From positions 1 to 19,167 of the forward strand of contig NW_021824282.1 of assembly GCF_006345805.1 (NCBI RefSeq): DNA of 19,167 nt, read 5' to 3'. Under the pieces are notes generated by a model. It did no database searches. It had not been told where the DNA came from and worked only from the letters and a program-made list of their open reading frames with translations. Position 1 is the stretch's first letter, and each line of letters begins with the position of its first letter. The position numbers and the translations under genes were made by a program. Origin of the DNA: Octopus sinensis. Lineage: Eukaryota. Shown in pieces: positions 4,399 to 18,491 of this stretch.

Positions 4399-4609
4399 TG
4401 GCAGAAACGTTAGCACGCCGGGCGAAATGCGTAGCCGTATTCCGTCTGCCGTTACGTTCTGAGTTCAAATTCCGCCGAGGTCGAATTTGCCTTTGATCCT
4501 TTCGGGGTCGATAAATAAAGTACCAGTTACGCACTGGGGTCGATATAATCGACTTAATCCCTTTGCTTGTCCCCTCTATGTTTAGCCCCTTGTGGGCAAT
4601 AAAGAAATA
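4399..4609 (+). mobile_element. SINE family 2, near full length (tail type a)
   Basis: tggcagaaacgttagcacgccgggcgaaatgcgtagccgtat...gagttcaaattccgccgaggtcg...gggtcgatataatcgactt...ccccttgtgggcaataaagaaata is highly similar to 11986-12213 and 16883-17115. Confidence 0.95.
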
Positions 4610-4971: not shown

Positions 4972-5168
4972 ACGAGGTTTTAGGGGTATCGGAAAGGTAT
5001 AGTTGGGGGCCCAACCTTCCGAGTTCTTCTACAGATCTTAGAAAATCTGACGGACCGCTGTCATAAGTGCGTGAATCTGAGAGGAGAATATGCTAAATAA
5101 AATCATAATTAACTGATCCTCCTGTTTTACTTTTTACTGAAAGAAAGGAATATTTCAGCAACCCCTTG

Positions 5169-5170
<2 letters not shown>
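4972..5170 (+). mobile_element. Mariner (Tc1/mariner) transposon 3' remnant: transposase C-terminus, right TIR and TA
   Basis: 5038-5100 encodes LENLTDRCHKCVNLRGEYAK*, preceded by frameshifted QPSEFFYR. This resembles the mariner C-terminal L..RW.KC...GeY motif. The end reads TA-CAAGGGGTTGCTGAAATATTCC on the reverse strand, a mariner-type terminus with TA at 5169-5170. The left boundary is uncertain. Confidence 0.75.
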
Positions 5171-5202
<32 letters not shown>

Positions 5203-5230
5203 TATATATATATATATACATACATATAAT

Positions 5231-5288: not shown

Positions 5289-5534
5289 CCATCGGGATAT
5301 CTTTGATCATATTAAGAAAAAACAAATTCAAGTAATCGATATCGAGGAATGAAGGGTACCTGAAATTGGGTATTTGTAAAGATATATATACATTAACAAA
5401 GGCACATCGACACGCACACACATACTGACGAATATATTTTGTGTGTATGTATGCATATATATATGTATATGCACCAACAAACACTCTTTAATTTCTCTCT
5501 ATCCCTATTTTCTCGTCGCTCTTTATACATACAT

Positions 5535-5563
5535 ATATAATTTAAATATACATATATATATAT

Positions 5564-5614
<51 letters not shown>

Positions 5615-5767
5615 AATATATATATATATATATATATACAATATATATATATATATATATATATAATATGATATATTATATATATATCTATATATATATA
5701 TATATCATTATATATATATAAACTATTATATATATAATATATATATATAATATATATATATATAGAT

Positions 5768-5805
<38 letters not shown>

Positions 5806-5855
5806 CGTACACATATGTGTGCATGCATATTATATATATATATATATATATATAA
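5535..5855. repeat. Long imperfect (TA)n tract
   Basis: Directly visible. Confidence 0.97.
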
Positions 5856-6605: not shown

Positions 6606-7053
6606 GTAAAAAAAAATACATAGGGGGTTGCATGATGGTGAGTGACTTGTTTCAACTGCAGTTTCGGCTCTTTAGGTATCATCTATAATGTTTGTAGAAG
6701 GTGAATCTTTCCAGATATGTTGTCACTTATGTAATGGGATGACTACTTTGTGTGTGTGTGTGTGCATTTACGATTTGTATGTGTACGGTGTGTGTGTTAT
6801 CTAGCATAAAGACTTTCTTCATACAGACAGGCTGATGTGCAGTGTTTTTGTACGGGTTAAGTGTGGTCTCTCCTGAGCGACAGTCAATGCTCAAAGCTAC
6901 AGGGTCGATTTATTCGTAAAAAGGAAATTTTGATATTGCGATTCGGCTGGTTCAGTGTTGTATGTGGTAGGACGCCTTAGAGATATACATAAATACACAC
7001 ACGTTCAACACACAGACACACAGACACACACACGCGCGCACAGATATATATAT

Positions 7054-7086
<33 letters not shown>

Positions 7087-7277
7087 GCGAGTCTAAGTGT
7101 GTGTGTGTGTTTATGTGTGTGTGTGTTCACATATCCAGATATGCCTATGTATATGATATATATACACAGATATAGACACAGTGTATATGTGAAGACACAC
7201 GCACACACAAACATACACACACACACACGCACACACTTATATATATACATATAATTTACAATCGTGTATTTATAGAG

Positions 7278-7305
7278 GCAGACAGACAGACAGATAAATA
7301 TATAT

Positions 7306-7384
<79 letters not shown>
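7278..7384. repeat. (GACA)n/(GATA)n microsatellite
   Basis: Directly visible. Confidence 0.97.
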
Positions 7385-7759
7385 CTAGCTCAATTGTTTT
7401 TCCAATAACATAATAACTTATCGATAGTATTCTACTATAAACTCATGATGTTCTCTTCCTTTCTTTTTTTCTTTTTGTTATTGTTGTCATGGTCACCGTC
7501 AACATATTTTTGTTTTTCTATATAACCATATAAGTACTTTCCCAACCAATTTGATAACATCCTGTGGTTTATTATTGAAATTGTTTTACATTTGTTTTAT
7601 TTCGTTCTTAAAATTTGTTGTTATTGTACTTTTATCTCTGCTAGACAAAATATCACCCAGGAGGTTAATACAAGCTGGATATACCATACTTATAACAATA
7701 CGTTTCTTTTGCAATGTATAATTATTATGTAATTCAATTGTATTAACTATACATGTATA

Positions 7760-7777
7760 TGCATATATATATAATGT

Positions 7778-7814
<37 letters not shown>

Positions 7815-7885
7815 ATATATATATATACATATTATATATACCACACATATATATATAATATATATATATATACATACACACACAT

Positions 7886-7921
<36 letters not shown>

Positions 7922-8016
7922 GTAGTATAATATATATATATATATCTATATATGATATATATAATGCATGTATGTATGTATATATATATATGTTATATAT
8001 ATATATATATATATGT
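7760..8016. repeat. Compound (TA)n/(CA)n microsatellite
   Basis: Directly visible. Confidence 0.95.
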
Positions 8017-8121
8017 ATAAGTAGCTTCTTCGCTTTTTGTCATGTTATATTCAGTTTGTATTGTAACAGTTTCTTTCTTCAGAATACATTTGCCTTTCAT
8101 CGCTTCACTATTCAGTAACAT

Positions 8122-9477: not shown

Positions 9478-9678
9478 AATTGGATGTATGTGCGTACACC
9501 CGAACGAGAGCGTGCTGAAAATACAGAGGGATTCTTACACTTACTGCAGCGGCCCTTTAGTTTACTTAGCCCTATTAAAGAACTTGGAATGTTGGGCCTC
9601 TAGCTAGACCTTTCGAGTTACCCTTAAAACCAGAAACGTGTCAGCACTCTCTCGCGTGTGCATGTGTGCGTGTGTATG

Positions 9679-9720
<42 letters not shown>

Positions 9721-9899
9721 CCCCGTGTGTGTGTATGTATGCTTGTATGTATGTATAACCGAACGTATGTATATACACACAGGTACCCATTTTTTTTCCT
9801 TACTCTCATCCTTTGGCGCTGGTCATGCTGGGATGTGTGTGTGAGTGTGCGCGCGCGCCCGAACTATACCCTGTATTGCGTATGAATTAAACATTTCAG

Positions 9900-10254: not shown

Positions 10255-10673
10255 CTATTTACTATTTTTACTATTTTACTTTTTTCAGTCATTTGACTGC
10301 GGCCATGCTGGAGCACCGTCTTTAGTCGAGCAAATCGACCCCGGGACTTATTCTTTGTAAGCTCAGTACTTATTCTATCGGTCTCTTTTGCCGAACCGCT
10401 AAGTGACGGGGACGTAAACACACCAGCATCGTTTGTCAAGCAATGCTAGGTGGACAAACACAGACACACGAACACATACACACGCATATATTTATATATA
10501 TACATATATACGACAGGCTTCTTTCAGTTTCCGTCTACCAAATCCACTCACAAGGCATTGGTCGGCCCGGGGCTATAGCAGGAGACACTTGCCCAAGATG
10601 CCACGCAGTGGGACTGAACCCGGAACCGTGTGGTTGGTTAGCAAGCTACTTACCACACAGCCACTCCTGCGCC
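10255..10673 (-). mobile_element. SINE family 1, full length
   Basis: The minus strand starts GGCGCAGGAGTGGCTGTGTGGTAAG, with A-box TGGCTGTGTGG and B-box GGTTCAGTCCC at 10620-10610. Then come a CORE-like CTTGGGCAAGTGTC, the internal microsatellite, the 3' body and an (A)nGT-type tail. Confidence 0.95.
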
Positions 10674-11085: not shown

Positions 11086-11170
11086 ATATATATATATATA
11101 GATATATATTAATATATATATAGATAGATAGATATTTATATATATATATATATATATATACATATATATT
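11026..11170. repeat. (TA)n/(GATA)n tract
   Basis: Directly visible; boundaries approximate. Confidence 0.9.
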
Positions 11171-11325
11171 GATTTCAAATTCCACCTAGGTCGACTTTGC
11201 CTTTCATTCTTTCGGGGGTCGATAAATTAAGTACCAGTTACGCACTGGAGTCGATCTAATCGACTGCCCCCCTCACTCTCCCAAAAGAATTTCGAGCCAC
11301 GTGCCTAGAGTAGAAAAGAATACTA
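11171..11325 (+). mobile_element. SINE family 2, 5'-truncated, tail type b
   Basis: ttcaaattccacctaggtcgactttgcctttcattctttcgggggtcgataaattaagtaccagttacgcactgg is near-identical to the family 2 body. It is followed by gtgcctagagtagaaaagaata instead of tail a. Confidence 0.9.
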
Positions 11326-11985
11326 TATGTGTGTGTGTGTGTGTGTACATACATGAACATGCGCAAATGCTGCTTATATGGTGGCGTTGGCGAAAGCACT
11401 ATAATTTTAAAGTGTATTATAATAATGTAGCAGTCAAGTATTCAAGTCTATATAAATGGTGGTACATTCTCTTAAATATGTGGCTTTTGATTTATAAATT
11501 TCCTAGATTTTTTTAAAGATGTAATATTTATTCCTTTTGTTCTATGATGAATGTTATCTAAAACCTAGCTCCCAAACTTGTTTCATTGTATTGAAAATTT
11601 AAATTGTTTTCAGTTTTGTCCCATAGCTAAATTAAAAGTCGAATACTTGTATGAAGTTAAATAGGGACCTGTAAAATAGTATTAAATGCTAACTGAACCC
11701 TAAGAAGTTCCTTACTTTATAAAGGCTCTTATTTCTATTTCGTTGCATGAGTTCATTATTCATAATATTTTACTCGTGATGTTCCATAGTTAAGGTTGCT
11801 TAAAGTAGAATACTCAAACTTGATTTCTAAACGCTTCAAATTTCTTCCATGCCCTTCTTTCCATATTTCGGTGCGTAATATTTCTTTTTGTTTCATTATT
11901 AATCAATTATATCAGATTTCTTTAAATAAATAAGTTTGTTTAAAGTGTAACATTAGGCAATCGGGATTGTATCGCAAATAATTAC

Positions 11986-12210
11986 GGCGAGCTGGCAGAA
12001 ACGTTAGCACGCCGGGCGAAATGCGTAGCCGTATTTCGTCTGCCGTTACGTTCTGGGTTCAAATTCCGCCGAGGTCGACTTTGCCTTTCATCCTTTCGGG
12101 GTCGATAAATTAAGTACCAGTTACGCACTGGGGTCGATGTAATCGACTTAATCCGTTTGTCTGTCCTTGTTTATCCCCTCTGTGTTTATCCCCTTGTGGG
12201 TAGTAAAGAA

Positions 12211-12213
<3 letters not shown>
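11986..12213 (+). mobile_element. SINE family 2, full length (tail type a)
   Basis: ggcgagctggcagaaacgttagc (A-box-like) ... gggttcaaattcc (B-box) ... ccccttgtgggtagtaaagaaata, running into (TA)n. Confidence 0.95.
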
Positions 12214-12283
<70 letters not shown>

Positions 12284-12286
<3 letters not shown>

Positions 12287-12484
12287 GAAAGAATGGAGTT
12301 GAACGACGAATTAACAAAATTCCCTTATTCTCGACATATGTTTCGAAGGCTGCATATTCCTAATTTCGAAGGAATAAGGGGTGCATTATGCCGCCTTCTC
12401 ATCAGAAAAATCAAGGAACTTATGTCAGCATCAAGATGAACAAAAACTTTTAGATGACTGCCCACACGGAGCCCATAGCGATAA
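12284..12484 (-). mobile_element. ~200-bp hammerhead-carrying module (putative non-autonomous Penelope-like/retrozyme-type element) flanked by (TA)n
   Basis: Unique sequence bounded on both sides by (TA)n and containing the hammerhead at 12321-12417. The element class is inferred. Confidence 0.6.
12321..12417 (-). ncRNA. Type I hammerhead ribozyme, canonical core
   Basis: Minus strand: UCCUUGAUUUUU-CUGAUGA-GAAGGCGGCAUA-[30 nt]-UAUGCAGCCUUC-GAAA-CAUAUG-UC/GAGAAUAAGGGA. Stem II pairs 11 of 12. Stem I pairs 11 of 12 including three G-U. Stem III is the palindrome ACAUAUGU. The GUC triplet predicts cleavage between 12333 and 12332. Confidence 0.85.
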
Positions 12485-12544
<60 letters not shown>

Positions 12545-12546
<2 letters not shown>

Positions 12547-12727
12547 CAACTCTGTTGTAGAAATTTTTTTCTCTCCTTGTTTCTTTTCTGTGTATCTTTC
12601 TGTCGAAGAGCGTAGGATCGAAACGTAAAAGACTTGTTTTATTTCTATTCCTGAGCGCCATACTAATACACTGTTTGTTTGTATTCCACCTGCCTTCGTC
12701 TTTTGTTTATTTCATAAACCTTCCCGT
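12545..12727 (+). mobile_element. ~180-bp module with hammerhead-like motif (putative Penelope-like terminal-repeat derivative) flanked by (TA)n
   Basis: Bounded by (TA)n on both sides, pyrimidine-rich, and contains the motif at 12595-12632. Confidence 0.55.
12595..12632 (+). ncRNA. Minimal non-canonical hammerhead-like motif
   Basis: UCUUU-CUGUCGA-A-GAGC-GUAG-GAUC-GAAA-C-GUA/AAAGA. Stem I is 5 perfect bp, stem II pairs 3 of 4, and stem III is a loopless ACGU palindrome. The core differs from CUGANGA by A6>U plus one extra A. Confidence 0.5.
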
Positions 12728-12760
<33 letters not shown>

Positions 12761-13452
12761 TATTATATATATATATATTATATATATATGTATGTATGTA
12801 TTAGAAATTGGATATTCTACAGTGTACTGATTAAGATAGTTAATTATTGATCGACAGTAGGCGAAGTCAAAAGATAAGTCACTTGTCAGAGGAGTAATAA
12901 TATATGCAAGAAAGAAATTGCGAAATTTTCGTAAGATATTTGACTCGACTTAAGTAGTTTTCCTTTCTGTGAGCGATGCACTGGAGCAGAGTAGTGACCA
13001 TTTTAAAAGGCAAACTGCGTGTGTATGTATGTGAGTTTGTTTGTGTGTGTGTGCGTGCGTGCGTATGTGTGTGTGTTTGTGTAGTGAAATGCATGTGCGT
13101 GTTGAAGTATTCATGTAGTGCCTATAGCGTAGGGCGAGCACTTATGTATAAGGAATGCAGTTGAATGCCTGTAATTATATGTCTATTAGTGTTTAAGCAG
13201 TTATGCTCATGTGTGTGTGTGTGTGTGTGCGTGTATAACTGTGTGTGTTAGAATGTGTGTATTTGGGTACGTATGTCTAGTGGTGTATGTATGAGGTGAA
13301 ATCCGTGCGCCTGTCCTATAGTCGTATATGTGTTGTACATCCTGTAGTAACTCATATGTACTAAAGTTTAAATTGGAGTATGTGTAGTGTATGTGTAGTT
13401 ACGACTGCATTGATGACAGTTTAGTGGTGTATGCGACACCATTTTGGATATA

Positions 13453-13758
13453 GACCTTCTCGACTTACGACCGTGTTCGTTCCGACTGTCAGGTCGGAAG
13501 TCGATTTGGTGATATATCGGATTTATATCTTTGAATACTATTCAAATGTAACTAATGCTTAAAAGCGACTGAGCCCGAGACATTGGCTGGCAGTGGATGC
13601 TTGGGTCTACAGGAGGCCCACGTTGCCCGATGCTGCCATAGTTATCGTATTCGCAGCTGTCCAACGTCCGAAAATCGATTTTTTATTAATATATTATTTC
13701 TTATTTCCTTATTTTTTGTGGTCGTAAGTGCGACTGGTCGTAAGTCGAAGAGAAGGTG
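13453..13758. mobile_element. 306-bp pogo/Tigger-like MITE with TA TSD
   Basis: Left end TA|GACCTTCTCGACTTACGACC (13453-13472). Right end GGTCGTAAGTCGAAGAGAAGGTG|TA (13736-13758). They match except for the first base and a 3-nt indel. A subterminal GGTCGTAAGT copy lies at ~13720. The CGACTTACGAC motif recalls Tigger/pogo TIRs. Confidence 0.8.
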
Positions 13759-14799
13759 TATCCTCAGATTTTCAGTTAAGATGGCTGCCAAATAGTTACT
13801 ACATTATTCTGTTTCTCCAGTAACTTCTCTTAAACAAGCTCTGTCATCTTAGCTTTCCTCATATTCTATGTATTTATCAGATTATATGAAATCCAACTAG
13901 AATTTAATATACAACAGCATCACTATAACCAGACTGAGTTAAATACCAGTTATGTAAGTAACCCCTCAACTCCTACCAAGTCTCTACCTTATGCTAAAAT
14001 AGAAACTGAAACGATATACTCAGATATGTATGTCTGAGCATATGTATATTATGGTGGTTATATGTAGGGAAACATTTTCCGCCTCGTAATTTCACAATTT
14101 CTTACCACTTTTCACTACTTTTCAATTTAAGGCCTTTAGAATCAAGGAGTCTCTTTCTTCCACACATTCAGCTTACTCTCTCTCTCTTTCTCTCTCTCCG
14201 CTACCTCTCTCCTATCTTTCCTTCTCTCTCTTTTTTTCTGTTCTATTCTGATGATCGTTTTGGAGTGTGTTCTTCCTCAAAGAAAAATGTGTCAAAGAAA
14301 AACAAGTAACATAGAAGAGAAAGATGGAGAAGAGAGGAAAAGTGGGAAAGTCAATTTAACTTTATAGCATTAATTTGTTTTCACATTTCCCTTTTGTGAA
14401 GCAACCACACTAATAAGATTTTGCAAATGAGAGGTGACATGTACATCAACCAGCCATGAGAGCGATACATAATGGAGCTAATAACTGACCCTATCGATCA
14501 AGGATTAACTTTTTTTCTTTTTCTTTTAAATATTTAACACGCAAATGGTTGATACAATACAATAATCCACTGAAATAGAGCAGATTAAGAAAGAAAGTTA
14601 ATCTCTCCACTACTGTGATCTGCCCTGGGGGTAACAAAAGGCTCAGTCAAGCTAGTGTAGATTTAAGGTCAAATCCATTCGGTACCTCAGTAACTTAGTA
14701 TTACTGTTCTTATTATTATTGTTACTGAGAATGCTTGATTGTCAGTATTATAGAAGAATCGGGTAAAATCACCTTGCAGTAATTATTGCAGTTTCATAT

Positions 14800-14950
14800 G
14801 TTGAAAGTTCAAATCCTGTCAAGATAAACTTCCCTTTTGTCCTTCCAAGGTCATTAAAATTAAGCACCAATCAAGTACAGGGGTTCGATTTAACCGACTC
14901 ACTTCTACCCTCAATCTGAATCCTTGTGCCTGTACTGGAGAATATTATTA
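14800..14950 (+). mobile_element. Degenerate SINE family 2 (tail type b)
   Basis: aagttcaaatcctgtc...aaaattaagcacc...ggggttcgatttaaccgact...ccttgtgcctgtactggagaata. Confidence 0.65.
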
Positions 14951-14973
14951 TTATTGAGGTTGGCAGTATCGCT

Positions 14974-15190
14974 GTTGTTATTGTTGTTGTTGTTTCAGCA
15001 ACAAGACTGGTAAGGGTGATTAGGTGAGGTCTAGGGCTTAGGGACGGGAGACCCCAGACCTTGGAAAAAGAAAAAAAACTTTGGTCGTCTTGTTGTAGTC
15101 GAGGGCTCTTCGTTGACGCCCAACACCACTGGGAGGTGGCCCTCGAAGTCACTGGAAATGGAGATCTCCAGGTCCAAATTCTTGGTCGGC
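14974..15190 (-). mobile_element. 217-bp retroposed insert with (AAC)n-like 3' tail and 12-bp TSD
   Basis: ggcagtatcgct occurs at 14962-14973 and 15191-15202. A gttgttattgttgttgttgtt tract abuts the left copy, and the interior is GC-rich. Confidence 0.6.
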
Positions 15191-15215
15191 GGCAGTATCG
15201 CTAGAAGTCGGTACC

Positions 15216-15255
15216 CCAGCATGGCCGCAGTTCAATGACTGAAGCAAGTAAAAGA
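15216..15255 (+). mobile_element. SINE family 1 extreme 3' end
   Basis: ccagcatggccgcagttcaatgactgaagcaagtaaaaga matches the family 1 terminus. Confidence 0.8.
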
Positions 15256-15386
15256 TGAAGGAATAATGACAGCTGTTTCTAACTGAAACAATGACTGAGG
15301 CAAATTGGTTTTTATTGGAAATTTACGATTATTGCCATTGTTTTATGCTATCCGTATTACATCTGTTGCTGTTAATATACACTTAA

Positions 15387-15727
15387 GGGTAAAGACCTCC
15401 TTCGGTCATGAATGACCATGGGATTGCACCTAGAAAGTTACCCTCCTAGACACAAGTCCGGACAAGGTTGTTTATGGAAGACCAGCAGTCGCCCATGCAT
15501 ACCAGCCTCCCCTCTCCACGCCACCATTGTTATCCAAGGGAAAGACAAAGGTCGATACAGCTTGGCACCAGTGACGTCGCCACTCATTTCTACAGCTGAG
15601 TGAACTGGAGCAACGTGAAATAAAGTGCCTTGCTCAAGAACACAACACGCAGCCCGGTCCGGGATTCGAGCTCACAACCTCACGATCGTAAGCTCGACGC
15701 TCTAACCACTGAGCCATGCGCCTTCAC
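15387..15727 (-). mobile_element. SINE family 3 (tRNA head plus CORE-like domain), full length with 15-bp TSD
   Basis: Minus strand GGCGCATGGCTCAGTGGTTAGAGCG...GAGCTCGAATCCCGG (A-box 15716-15706, B-box ~15671-15661), then GTGTTCTTGAGCAAGGCACTT...CAGCTGTAGAAATGAG (CORE-like). The TSD ttaatatacacttaa is at 15372-15386 and 15728-15742. Confidence 0.92.
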
Positions 15728-15804
15728 TTAATATACACTTAATCATGTAATAATTACCGATTCTTTTTATGTCTGTTTGTCTTAATATTCATCTCTAAAA
15801 GGTT

Positions 15805-16030
15805 GATCGAATGGCTGAATCGGTAAAGTAAAAGACAAACTTTCTTTCTGAATTGGTTTACGTCTCTTTGTTTTCTAATTGTTAACCCCACGAAGACCGG
15901 CTTTTTTTTTTTTTTTGTTATTCTTCTAGAGTCGATAAAATAAAGTACCAGTGTACCAGTCAAGTACCGGCGTCTCTTCGATTAAGTGCTTTCTCTCCCA
16001 GTTTGTGACTCTATGAATCTGGAATCAATA
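15805..16030 (+). mobile_element. Old degenerate family 2-like SINE
   Basis: gagtcgataaaataaagtaccagt core is recognisable; boundaries approximate. Confidence 0.5.
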
Positions 16031-16257
16031 AAACCAGCAGCAATACTAATTGTAATTGTTGCTTAACACAAAGGTAGCTTTGTTCAAGCTAACATGTGAA
16101 GTAAGACGTTACAGTCGTGACAATTACACCACGTATTGTTTCAAAGACATCGTTATTTCGTCGCTCCTATTTTTAGACGATGAGTTTAGACAGATTTGCT
16201 TGCTGTTTACATCGCCTATGTAGAAGCATGCTAGTGGATTTGTTTAGCAAGTAATAG

Positions 16258-16385
16258 AGCGACGATGTACAGAATCGGTAGAGCTTCAGATACAACAGCT
16301 CATCGTATTTTGCTACCTTCTGAGTTCAAATTCCGATAGAAGAGCGTATGCCAGCCTTCTTTCAATGGTCGATAAAATATGTAGC
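16258..16385 (+). mobile_element. Old degenerate family 2-like SINE
   Basis: ttctgagttcaaattccg...ggtcgataaaatatgtagc. Confidence 0.6.
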
Positions 16386-16882
16386 TGATAAGTGTTGCAC
16401 ACGAGAGTAGTTCGATTCCCACGGCGTTCGATTTTCAGAGCCCCTGAATTCATTCTATGCTGTGTTAACACGGCTGGAGGTTCGTCCTATGGCGAAGATA
16501 TCCGAGTACTGCGGTTTGTCGAAATCTGCATCGATATTTTCTCTCTGTACGTGAGAGGCGATGATACAACCATCAATAACTTTTGAATTTTGGGAGGAAT
16601 TAGAACGGAAAGAGCCGAAAAAAACACGACAAGGTAGCTTGTCTGATGTTCCTATAATTCTGCTGAAACGGATAAATGAGGAAGCCTTTACATGGTCATT
16701 TATTATACTAGAAATAGAAGCTAACCAACCTCCAAATTACACCGTAATGCTTCTCAGATATATATTTTAAATAAATGGATATGTTGGATCAGAATGTTGC
16801 CATAAATATATACATAAAAAGGAATAATGCTCCTTACTGAAATACTTCCGATAGCAGATCTGGCCTGTGGCTAAAAAATACC

Positions 16883-17115
16883 TATTTCTTTACTACTCAC
16901 AAGAGGCTAAATACAGAGAGGACAAACGAGGACAGACAAACGGATTAAGTCGATTATATCGATCCCAGTGCGTAACTGGTACTTATTTAATCGACCCCGA
17001 AAGGATGAAAGGCAAAGTCGACCTCGGCGGAATTTGAACTCAGAACGTAACGGCAGACTAAATACCGCTAATCCTTTCGCCTGGCGTGCTAACGATTCTG
17101 CCAGGTCGTCGCCCT
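16883..17115 (-). mobile_element. SINE family 2, full length (tail type a), 19-bp TSD
   Basis: Reverse complement of 11986-12213 with few changes. cctgtggctaaaaaatacc occurs at 16864-16882 and 17116-17134. Confidence 0.97.
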
Positions 17116-17544: not shown

Positions 17545-17675
17545 GAAGATTAGCAAAGTCGTTCGAATATCGGACAGAATGACCGGTGTTGCTCGATCTA
17601 GTGTTCTGAGTTCAAAACTTGCCGAAGTCAACTTCGCTTTTCATCCTTCTGAGTTCGATAAATAAAGTAGCAACA
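17545..17675 (+). mobile_element. Old degenerate family 2-like SINE
   Basis: gttctgagttcaaaacttgccgaagtcaacttcgcttttcatccttctgagttcgataaataaagtagc. Confidence 0.65.
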
Positions 17676-18026: not shown

Positions 18027-18205
18027 AGGAGTCTACTTTGGTAAGTAGCTTGCATACGAACCACATTGTTCCGGGTTCAGTCCCACTGCGTGGCACCTTG
18101 AGCAAGTGTCTTCTACTATAGCCTCTGGCTGACCAAAGCCTTGTGAGTGGATTTGGTAGACGGAAACTGAAAGAAGCCCGTCGTATATATATATATATAT
18201 ATATA

Positions 18206-18260
<55 letters not shown>

Positions 18261-18491
18261 TGTGTGTGTGTATGTTTGTGTGTCTGTGTTTGTTCCCCCC
18301 CAACATCGCTTGACAACCGATGTTGGTGTGTCTACGTGCCCGTAACATAGCGGTTCGCCAAGAGAGACCGATAGAATAAGTACTAGGTTTACAAAGAATA
18401 AGTCCTGGGGCGATTTGTTCGGCTAAAGGCGGTGCTCCAACATGGCCACAGTCAAATGACTGAAACAGGTAAGTAAAAGTAAATAAAAGTA
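18027..18491 (+). mobile_element. SINE family 1, near full length
   Basis: ggtaagtagcttgc...ccgggttcagtcccactgcgtggcaccttgagcaagtgtc..., internal (TA)n(TG)n, 3' body and taaaagt tail. The A-box region is altered. Confidence 0.95.

What the first reader, a model, noticed from the sequence alone, without database searches (positions are those of the whole stretch)
12321..12417. Complete type I hammerhead ribozyme with an oversized stem II hidden in a (TA)n tract
Seen in sequence: the minus strand has CUGAUGA (12405-12399), GAAA (12344-12341) and a GUC triplet (12335-12333) in the correct order. All three helices can be drawn: stem I UCCUUGAUUUUU/GAGAAUAAGGGA (11 of 12, three G-U), stem II GAAGGCGGCAUA/UAUGCAGCCUUC (11 of 12) and stem III AC/GU closing AUAU. 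Stem II encloses a 30-nt insert with its own UUCCU/AGGAA hairpin. Established: short type I hammerheads with a palindromic stem III occur in Penelope-like retroelements and metazoan non-LTR retrozymes, often acting as dimers. Inference: this is a self-cleaving mobile RNA family, and a stem II domain of ~54 nt is much longer than in minimal forms. The G-U pairs next to the core may be C>T decay of ATTCTC.
Basis: partly seen in the sequence, partly recalled or inferred. Interest (0 to 1): 0.85.

Follow-up and report, generated by a model that had tools for sequence, protein, structure and literature searches.

The report
Solo hammerhead ribozyme between (TA)n tracts

Summary
CUGAUGA, GAAA and GUC sit where stated, and stems I (11 of 12), II (11 of 12) and III (A-U and C-G closing AUAU) can all be drawn. 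Rfam Hammerhead_1 aligns over its full length at 25.2 bits. That is below the gathering score of 34, because of a 50-nt insertion in stem II. A descriptor scan finds no other hammerhead in the window and none in 40 Mb of random sequence. At the observed helix quality I expect about 0.01 chance hits per 5 Gb.

New here: the 30-nt "insert" repeats CCUUCGAAA, U-H and a stem I 3' strand. With the same CUGAUGA box this draws a nested minimal hammerhead (3 of 10^6 shuffles). The insert also holds a perfect 9-nt complement of the outer stem I 3' strand.

The 197-nt unit is single-copy in the window. It has no tandem partner and no reverse transcriptase or endonuclease remnant nearby. It lies between two (TA)n tracts, a reported preferred target of some Penelope-like elements.

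No homologues could be reached, because the databases here hold almost none of this organism's DNA. Family membership, covariation and activity are therefore untested.

Best reading: a solo relic of a Penelope-like element or retrozyme hammerhead. It is a new member of a known kind, of modest interest.

The parts
12284..12480 (-). 197-nt unique unit carrying the hammerhead. It has 63 nt upstream and 37 nt downstream of the motif, and 40% GC.
   Evidence: Bounded by TRF-defined (TA)n tracts. No other copy in the window. GC. The fold of the whole unit is not unusually stable (z = -0.15).
12406..12417 (-). Stem I, 5' strand: UCCUUGAUUUUU.
   Evidence: Pairs with 12332-12321, 11 of 12 including 3 U.G. 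Duplex energy -6.6 kcal/mol.
12399..12405 (-). Core box CUGAUGA (C3-A9).
12387..12398 (-). Stem II, 5' strand: GAAGGCGGCAUA. G10.1 is 12398.
   Evidence: I1, 92% complementary. Pair probabilities 0.94-0.99 for the first ten paired positions, falling to 0.60 and 0.35 for the two distal pairs.
12357..12386 (-). The 30-nt 'insert' in stem II, which is a nested second copy of the ribozyme's 3' half. It reads AUGCAC | CCCUUAUU | CCUUC GAAA | U U | AGGAA(UA).
   Evidence: With the same CUGAUGA box it draws an inner minimal hammerhead: stem II 12398-94 with 12372-68, GAAA 12367-64, U16.1 12363, U17 12362, and stem I 12411-06 with 12361-56. Only 3 of 1e6 shuffles of the insert give this.
12364..12372 (-). 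Inner CCUUCGAAA, an exact 9-nt direct repeat of 12349-12341.
   Evidence: D1, spacing 23.
12372..12380 (-). CCCUUAUUC, a perfect complement of the outer stem I 3' strand at 12330-12322. This pairing crosses stem II, so it is a pseudoknot or a competitor of stem I.
   Evidence: I2, 100%. Duplex energy -13.7 kcal/mol, and 113 of 200,000 shuffles reach 9 nt.
12345..12356 (-). Stem II, 3' strand: UAUGCAGCCUUC. C11.1 is 12345.
12341..12344 (-). Core box GAAA (G12, A13, A14, A15.1).
12334..12340 (-). Helix III: C15.2, AUAU loop, G16.2, U16.1. ACAUAUGU (12341-12334) is a palindrome.
   Evidence: Monomer pair probability is about 0.01. The intermolecular 8-bp helix has -7.0 kcal/mol and the dimer minimum-free-energy fold is the double hammerhead.
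12333..12333 (-). C17. The predicted scissile bond lies between 12333 and 12332.
   Evidence: Position follows from hammerhead numbering applied. Cleavage was not tested.
12321..12332 (-). Stem I, 3' strand: GAGAAUAAGGGA.
12211..12283 (.). (TA)36 flank, 97% pure. It abuts the 3' end of a SINE copy (11985-12211).
12481..12544 (.). (TA)32 flank.

Best explanation
The segment 12284-12480 is a solo, non-autonomous retroelement fragment. It is either the hammerhead-bearing terminal part of a 5'-truncated Penelope-like element (PLE) or a monomeric 'solo' non-LTR retrozyme. It sits in a (TA)n microsatellite of an AT-rich, SINE- and microsatellite-laden animal genome.

Its minus-strand transcript can fold into a canonical type I hammerhead. 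Helices I and II flank an intact 15-nt core, and cleavage would occur 3' of C12333, by the hammerhead's known transesterification chemistry (2',3'-cyclic phosphate and 5'-OH ends). Helix III has only two base pairs on a palindromic AUAU loop. Efficient cutting would therefore need two copies to pair through ACAUAUGU as a double hammerhead. This lone genomic copy has no partner in cis, so it is probably a dead-end insertion rather than a source element.

The long stem II is a by-product of an internal duplication of about 23-30 nt of the ribozyme's 3' half (AUGCAS...CCUUCGAAA...UY-RRGAAUA). The second AUGCAG pairs with CGGCAU and extends stem II from 5 to 12 bp, looping out the first copy.

Shown: the motif, its non-random nature, the nested second 3' half, single-copy status in the window and the (TA)n flanks. 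Inferred: retroelement origin, the duplication mechanism and dimer-dependent activity.
For: The motif is complete and canonical.

Chance is excluded.

The outer hammerhead fold is near-optimal: -34.5 kcal/mol against a free minimum of -36.8, and -22.0 for the inner fold.

The dimer minimum-free-energy fold is the double hammerhead, at -56.8 against 2 x -25.1 kcal/mol.

The second 3' half is supported by the 9-nt exact repeat and by an inner hammerhead solution seen in only 3 of 1e6 shuffles.

The flanks fit. Only 2.3% of the window lies in short gaps between (TA)n tracts, and (TA)n is the reported preferred target of Neptune and Naiad PLEs (PMC8557442).

The literature fits in four ways:
- Most genomic PLE-type hammerheads occur as single motifs, attributed to truncated PLEs, and a short palindromic helix III is typical (PMC4209133).
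- Retrozyme units are 170-400 nt with low GC (PMC7229834).
- Solo monomers are common and are viewed as non-transposing offspring, and retrozymes are related to the terminal repeats (pLTRs) of PLEs (bioRxiv 10.64898/2026.07.22.740005).
- PLEs, some recently active, are reported in Octopus vulgaris (PMC13282606). This matters only if the window is cephalopod.
Against: No homologous copy was found, so the existence of a family, helix covariation and any link to a PLE are unproven.

There is no reverse transcriptase or GIY-YIG remnant in ORF pieces upstream. There is no second terminal repeat and no tandem copy.

(TA)n tracts are very frequent here: 13 tracts covering 7.1% of the window. The flanks are therefore only modest evidence for targeted insertion.

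The Rfam score is below gathering. At 25.2 bits, about one chance hit per genome would be expected for the Rfam model alone.

Generic alignment supports only the 9-mer of the proposed duplication (p about 0.005). TRF sees no tandem repeat.

There are no canonical loop I to loop II tertiary contacts, so activity at physiological Mg2+ is doubtful.
Confidence: 0.55

Rival explanations
1. One reading: an active member of an undescribed family of self-cleaving mobile RNAs, in which the roughly 54-nt stem II domain is a conserved functional feature.
For: The core is intact, and helices I and II are kept with wobble pairs rather than breaks. The outer fold lies within 2.3 kcal/mol of the minimum free energy. 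The unit size and GC fit retrozymes.
Against: The window holds a single copy with no tandem array. The insert is explained by a repeat of the ribozyme's own 3' half. Stem I is weak, at -6.6 kcal/mol, and is out-competed by the insert's CCCUUAUUC at -13.7 kcal/mol. No family evidence was obtainable.
Confidence: 0.2
2. A conformational switch. The two alternative 3' halves and the anti-stem-I segment are selected features that toggle the RNA between a cleaving fold and a protected fold, or between two cleavage sites (C12333 and U12362). This would resemble the way viroid-like RNAs avoid re-cleavage after ligation.
For: Three non-random internal relationships involve exactly the functional segments. 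Pseudoknots between loop II and sequences flanking stem I are common in hammerheads (PMC3088659).
Against: The inner fold is 12.5 kcal/mol worse than the outer one. It also lacks helix III beyond A15.1-U16.1. The 9-nt pairing overlaps stem I itself rather than a free tail. With only one sequence there is no covariation.
Confidence: 0.1
3. A host-exapted hammerhead, for example in an intron or UTR, with a regulatory role unrelated to transposition.
For: Isolated conserved hammerheads exist in vertebrate genes (mentioned in PMC7229834).
Against: The window shows no coding sequence or gene structure. The surroundings are microsatellites and SINEs.
Confidence: 0.05
4. A chance match to the hammerhead consensus in AT-rich DNA.
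For: The Rfam score is below gathering. Hammerhead-like consensus matches are known to occur by chance in large databases (PMC3088659). Three database hits to CTGATGAGAAGG-N30-60-CCTTCGAAAC were chance matches.
Against: Those chance hits lack helix III, U-H and stem I. The full descriptor gives 0 hits in 40 Mb. The expectation is about 1e-7 per window at the observed helix quality. A second nested 3' half (3 of 1e6 shuffles) cannot arise by chance.
Confidence: 0.03

Closest known systems
Hammerheads in the terminal repeats (pLTRs) of Penelope-like elements and their truncated solo copies (Cervera & de la Pena 2014, PMC4209133).
   Same: Type I topology, G10.1-C11.1, a helix II longer than the canonical 4 bp, and a small palindromic helix III as in the Drosophila, rotifer and shrimp variants. 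They mostly occur as single dispersed motifs. The (TA)n context matches the target preference reported for Neptune and Naiad PLEs (PMC8557442).
   Different: There is no adjacent RT or GIY-YIG ORF and no second terminal repeat. There is no unpaired nucleotide between A9 and G10.1. Helix I is long (12 bp) rather than 4-5 bp. Helix II is 12 bp plus a 30-nt branch, against 6-8 bp.
Metazoan non-LTR retrozymes with canonical type I hammerheads (Cervera & de la Pena 2020, PMC7229834; Li et al. 2026 preprint).
   Same: The unit length of 197 nt falls within 170-400 nt, and GC is low. Helix III has 2 bp capped by a palindromic tetraloop, so dimer-dependent cleavage is expected. 'Solo monomer' copies have been described.
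   Different: It is not in a tandem array. It lacks the 6-bp helix I and 4-bp helix II with conserved loop-loop contacts. No circular RNA evidence is available.
Rfam Hammerhead_1 (RF00163).
   Same: Full-length alignment to the model (positions 1-45 of 45) with all conserved core positions.
   Different: It scores 25.2 bits, below the gathering score of 34, because of a 50-nt insertion in stem II.
Newt satellite 2, Schistosoma Sm-alpha and ASBVd-type double hammerheads.
   Same: Helix III is weak in the monomer. Two copies are predicted to form an extended helix III (8 bp here).
   Different: Those ribozymes sit in tandem or multimeric transcripts. This locus offers no second copy in cis.

Membership tests
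Hammerhead ribozyme, type I (Rfam RF00163) | Conserved core C3 U4 G5 A6 N7 G8 A9 ... G12 A13 A14 ... A15.1-U16.1 H17, in that order. | tested here: met
   All positions are canonical and H17 is C.
Hammerhead ribozyme, type I (Rfam RF00163) | Three helices around the core, with helix I open-ended and a G10.1-C11.1 pair. | tested here: met
   Helix I has 11 of 12 pairs, helix II 11 of 12, and helix III 2 bp.
Hammerhead ribozyme, type I (Rfam RF00163) | Score at or above the curated gathering threshold. | tested here: not met
   25.2 bits against 34. The deficit is due to the 50-nt insertion in stem II.
Hammerhead ribozyme, type I (Rfam RF00163) | Helices supported by covariation among homologues. 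| not testable with these tools
   No homologue was retrievable. The control with the abundant SINE shows that the databases hold almost none of this genome.
Hammerhead ribozyme, type I (Rfam RF00163) | Site-specific self-cleavage. | not testable with these tools
   Needs in vitro transcription and cleavage mapping.
Hammerhead ribozyme, type I (Rfam RF00163) | Tertiary contact between helix I and loop II (the extended, fast form). | tested here: inconclusive
   There is no canonical loop I to loop II arrangement. A 9-nt complementarity between the stem II insert and the stem I 3' strand exists, but it overlaps stem I.
Metazoan non-LTR retrozyme | Head-to-tail tandem repeats of 150-450 bp, each with a hammerhead. 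| tested here: not met
   No tandem repeat of that period. Single hammerhead and single unit in 19 kb.
Metazoan non-LTR retrozyme | Unit of about 170-400 nt with low GC (below 45-50%). | tested here: met
   197 nt and 40% GC. This is weak evidence, because the unit boundaries are set by the (TA)n tracts.
Metazoan non-LTR retrozyme | Expressed as linear and circular unit-length RNAs. | not testable with these tools
   No transcriptome data are available.
Penelope-like element (PLE) | An ORF with a telomerase-like reverse transcriptase and a GIY-YIG endonuclease. | tested here: not met
   No long ORF. Ten stop-free pieces at 12434-16736 (eight minus-strand, i.e. upstream on the hammerhead strand, and two plus-strand) gave no RT or GIY-YIG Pfam hit.
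Penelope-like element (PLE) | Hammerhead located in direct terminal repeats (pLTRs). | tested here: not met
   No second copy of the unit in the window. This is compatible only with a truncated or solo fragment.
Penelope-like element (PLE) | Insertion bias for (TA)n microsatellites (Neptune and Naiad clades). | tested here: inconclusive
   The unit is flanked by (TA)36 and (TA)32, and only 2.3% of the window lies in such gaps. However, (TA)n is very common here.

The most novel reading that the evidence does not exclude
The nested second 3' half and the loop-II segment complementary to the stem I 3' strand may not be accidents of this copy. They could be conserved features of an undescribed invertebrate, possibly cephalopod, hammerhead family. 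In that case one 5' half would choose between two 3' halves, or between a cleaving fold and a pseudoknotted protected fold. That would be a built-in switch controlling self-cleavage against ligation or circularisation of a PLE-dependent mobile RNA.
Probability: 0.1. Interest if true: 0.6.

Novelty: new member of a known kind. Interest (0 to 1): 0.32.

Why it matters
Type I hammerheads with palindromic helix III are already known by the thousand in invertebrate genomes, so one more solo copy changes little.

Its value is as a lead. If the source genome holds a family of these units, it would document hammerhead-bearing PLE or retrozyme elements in that lineage, which none of the papers found and read here describe. 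It would also show whether hammerheads can tolerate, or exploit, a duplicated 3' half and a 12-bp helix II.

It is also a useful benchmark. A true hammerhead missed by Rfam's gathering threshold because of a stem II insertion was picked up by eye.

Tried and rejected
1. Rfam at gathering threshold over the whole window gave nothing. At E-value threshold, about 190 'miRNA' hits all sit on microsatellites and are artefacts.

2. Other copies in the window. BLAST of the unit with word size 7 gave only noise. The neighbouring inter-(TA)n segments also have no copies.

3. Pattern scans with CTGATGAGAAGG-N30-60-CCTTCGAAAC.
   - Metagenome and prokaryote collections returned one and the same gammaproteobacterial sequence, with no helix III and no stem I.
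   - Viral contigs returned one chance hit.
   - The 20-mer CCTTCGAAACATATGTCGAG returned none.

4. The 'peptide trick', which uses ORFs across the unit to pull repeat copies out of the protein collections. The + and - frames both returned nothing.
   - The control with an ORF across the abundant SINE found a single 543-bp ENA metagenome contig.
   - These negatives are therefore uninformative.
   - For the same reason I did not spend the all-representatives HMMER job.

5. An exact look-up of ten window ORFs found none in the collection.

6. Pfam on ten stop-free pieces at 12434-16736 (eight of them upstream on the hammerhead strand) gave no RT or endonuclease hit.

7. Thermodynamic support was weak:
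   - Motif z = -1.9.
   - Whole unit z = -0.15.
   - Extension of helix I beyond 12 bp is not significant (p about 0.17).
   - A 10-nt 90% complementarity between 12426-12417 and 12342-12333 (I3) is within chance expectation.

8. TRF at score 30 sees no tandem duplication inside the unit. The duplication inference rests.

9. Sequence strings of the SINE and of the ribozyme were not found in the paper library. Supplements of the key papers are not held or do not mention cephalopods.

10. ARAGORN found no tRNA. The bacterial promoter and terminator scan is irrelevant here.

Full report
**1. The observation**

- Stem I 5' strand: UCCUUGAUUUUU, 12417-12406
- Core box: CUGAUGA, 12405-12399
- Stem II 5' strand: GAAGGCGGCAUA, 12398-12387
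- A 30-nt insert: 12386-12357
- Stem II 3' strand: UAUGCAGCCUUC, 12356-12345
- Core box: GAAA, 12344-12341
- Helix III: C-AUAU-G, then U16.1
- C17: 12333
- Stem I 3' strand: GAGAAUAAGGGA, 12332-12321

Stem I pairs at 11 of 12 positions, three of them U.G, with a G.A at pair 7. Stem II pairs at 11 of 12 positions, all Watson-Crick, also with a G.A at pair 7. The repeat finder reports the stem II arms independently (I1). Every conserved core position is canonical, including G10.1-C11.1, A15.1-U16.1 and C17.

**2. Is it more than chance?**

Rfam finds nothing at gathering thresholds. With permissive thresholds, Hammerhead_1 (RF00163) aligns over the whole model (1-45) at 25.2 bits, against a gathering score of 34. 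E is 2.6e-4 on the 181-nt stretch. The cost is a 50-nt insertion in stem II.

Rescaled, that score alone would be E of about 0.03 for the window, and about 1 per 5.4e9 positions for this one family. The Rfam score by itself would not survive a genome-wide scan.

The covariance model gives no credit for the long helices, so I wrote an RNAmotif-like descriptor: CUGANGA, helix II of at least 4 bp, GAAA, A15.1-U16.1 plus at least 1 bp, U-H, and helix I of at least 5 bp.

- It finds only this site in the window, on either strand.
- It finds nothing in 40 Mb of first-order Markov sequence with the window's composition.
- The analytic expectation is 4e-4 per window for the relaxed descriptor.
- At the observed helix quality it is 9e-8 per window, or about 0.013 per 5.4e9 positions.

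Three database matches to the two-box pattern CTGATGAGAAGG-N30-60-CCTTCGAAAC lack helix III, U-H and stem I. They serve as negative controls.

Thermodynamics adds little. The motif has z = -1.9 and the whole unit z = -0.15. Even so, the minimum-free-energy fold contains stems I and II, and the enforced hammerhead fold is within 2.3 kcal/mol of the optimum.

Conclusion: this is a real hammerhead-derived sequence.

**3. What the stem II 'insert' is**

A looser scan that allows no helix III returned a second solution using the same CUGAUGA box:

- Stem II GAAGG/CCUUC: 12398-94 with 12372-68, closing a 21-nt loop
- GAAA: 12367-64
- U16.1: 12363
- U17: 12362
- A 6-bp stem I, AUUUUU/AGGAAU: 12411-06 with 12361-56

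- CCUUCGAAA is an exact 9-nt direct repeat, at 12372-64 and 12349-41.
- AUGCAC and AUGCAG precede the two copies.
- U-Y and RRGAAUA follow them.

The two copies differ by two indels. CCCUUAUU is present only in the inner copy. CAUAUG, which is helix III, is present only in the outer copy.

Only 3 of 10^6 composition-preserving shuffles of the insert give an inner hammerhead of this quality, and 79 give a relaxed one. Generic alignment recovers just the 9-mer (p about 0.005) and TRF sees no tandem repeat. The duplication is thus an inference from the functional pattern.

The simplest history is a duplication of about 23-30 nt, by slippage or by template switching at AUA microhomology. Afterwards the second AUGCAG could pair with CGGCAU. 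That lengthened stem II from 5 to 12 bp and looped out the first copy.

The outer fold is 12.5 kcal/mol better than the inner one.

**4. A further non-random feature**

CCCUUAUUC (12380-72), inside the insert, is a perfect Watson-Crick complement of GAAUAAGGG (12330-22) in the outer stem I 3' strand (I2).

- Its duplex energy is -13.7 kcal/mol, against -6.6 for stem I itself.
- Only 113 of 200,000 shuffles reach 9 nt.
- This pairing crosses stem II, so it would be a pseudoknot.

It could be a competitor that switches the ribozyme off. It could be a remnant of a pseudoknot-type tertiary contact of the kind common in hammerheads (PMC3088659). Or it could be a relic of an undecayed stem I 5' strand. 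With one sequence I cannot decide.

**5. Context**

The window is AT-rich non-coding eukaryotic DNA. It has no credible ORF, and 13 (TA)n tracts cover 7.1% of it. It also contains a (CATA)222 array and several interspersed repeats.

One of those repeats is a tRNA-like SINE. One copy of it (11985-12211) ends exactly at the left (TA)36.

The hammerhead lies in a 197-nt unique segment (12284-12480, 40% GC) between (TA)36 and (TA)32. Only 2.3% of the window lies in such short inter-(TA)n gaps.

There is no second copy of the unit, no tandem array and no second hammerhead in 19 kb. No reverse transcriptase or GIY-YIG remnant appears in ten stop-free pieces at 12434-16736, eight of which lie upstream on the same strand.

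**6. Comparison with what is known**

- Metazoan type I hammerheads typically have a 1-2 bp helix III capped by a small palindromic loop, and they work as dimers.
- PLE hammerheads have a longer helix II and mostly occur as single dispersed motifs, attributed to truncated PLEs (PMC4209133).
- Non-LTR retrozymes are tandem units of 170-400 nt (PMC7229834).
- A 2026 preprint relates retrozymes to PLE terminal repeats, and describes frequent solo monomers as non-transposing offspring.
- Neptune and Naiad PLEs prefer (TA)n targets (PMC8557442).
- In a purified PLE system, hammerhead mutants did not affect insertion in vitro, so the role of PLE hammerheads is still open (PMC11167929).

The present motif matches the class in core, topology, palindromic helix III and predicted double-hammerhead formation. 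Two monomers cofold to -56.8 kcal/mol against 2 x -25.1, with an 8-bp ACAUAUGU helix.

It differs in its 12-bp helices I and II, the branched stem II, the lack of canonical loop-loop contacts, and its solitary state.

It fails the defining tests for a retrozyme (tandem array) and for a PLE (ORF, terminal repeats) at this locus. It can only be filed as a solo derivative.

**7. Mechanism proposed**

If the minus strand is transcribed, the RNA folds into the outer hammerhead and would cleave 3' of C12333. Helix III is almost never formed in the monomer, with pair probability about 0.01. Efficient cleavage would therefore need a second copy, in trans or in a tandem transcript, which this locus does not provide. 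Without tertiary contacts the rate should be low at physiological Mg2+. The copy is most likely a dead-end insertion.

My confidence, by step:

| Step | Confidence |
|---|---|
| Hammerhead-derived | about 0.9 |
| PLE or retrozyme solo copy | about 0.6 |
| Insert is an internal duplication | about 0.7 |
| Cleaves in vitro as a dimer | about 0.4-0.5 |

**8. What could not be done**

No collection available here contains this organism's genome.

- The peptide trick failed in two frames.
- The control with the abundant SINE returned one 543-bp metagenome contig.
- The window's own ORFs are not on record.

The absence of homologues is therefore uninformative. Family membership, covariation, the C>T decay idea and the 'cephalopod' attribution all remain untested. 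Octopus vulgaris is reported to carry PLEs, some recently active, and 11.6% SINEs, with no mention of hammerheads (PMC13282606).

**9. Verdict**

This is a new member of a known kind, and the 'oversized stem II' is explained by a nested duplicate of the 3' half. Interest is modest at 0.32. The switch reading deserves attention only if other copies conserve the nested features.

Noticed in passing
4399-4572 (+), 11985-12211 (+), 16878-17111 (-); degenerate copies at 11166-11235, 16317-16386 and 17603-17672: An interspersed SINE-like family with a tRNA-like B-box region (GGTTCAAATTCCGCCGAGGTCGAC...GGGGTCGATAAATTAAGTACC) that ends in TAAAGAAATA. Copies are 90-95% alike. One copy ends exactly at the left (TA)n of the hammerhead unit. 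ARAGORN calls no tRNA.
   Followed up: partly
339-584, 10266-10655 and 18039-18410: A second interspersed repeat in inverted orientation, 82-90% complementary. Each copy is interrupted by TA or TG microsatellite. Its spurious ORFs share the peptide SFSFRLPNPLTR.WSARGYSRRHL.
   Followed up: no
1348-2236; 7280-7384; 5524-5854; 7748-8019: Very long microsatellites: (CATA)222, (AGAT)26, and (TA)n arrays of 171 and 137 units. The 13 (TA)n tracts make up 7.1% of the window.
   Followed up: partly
Whole window, for example 1386-2186, 5166-5228, 7028-7223 and 9654-9738: About 190 sub-threshold Rfam matches to mir-297, mir-466, mir-3149, mir-1277 and others all lie on microsatellites. They are artefacts of simple repeats. 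A weak SCARNA7 match at 18148-18440 also overlaps TA and TG repeats.
   Followed up: partly
12545-12727: A second short unique segment (183 nt) is caught between two (TA)n tracts, directly upstream of the hammerhead unit on the minus strand. It has no copy elsewhere in the window and no ribozyme motif. It could be part of the same insertion or another one.
   Followed up: partly
12426-12417 and 12342-12333 (minus strand): GACAUAAGUU, just 5' of stem I, is 90% complementary to AACAUAUGUC (A13, A14, helix III and C17). That makes it a near-copy of the helix III palindrome. It is within chance expectation for a 197-nt AU-rich segment, but it could sequester the cleavage site.
   Followed up: partly
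L001 4784-4840 and L002 1356-1412: An identical gammaproteobacterial sequence (a Tara Oceans MAG and a metagenome contig) matches the two-box pattern CTGATGAGAAGG...CCTTCGAAAC but has no other hammerhead element. It is a chance match and served as a negative control.
   Followed up: yes
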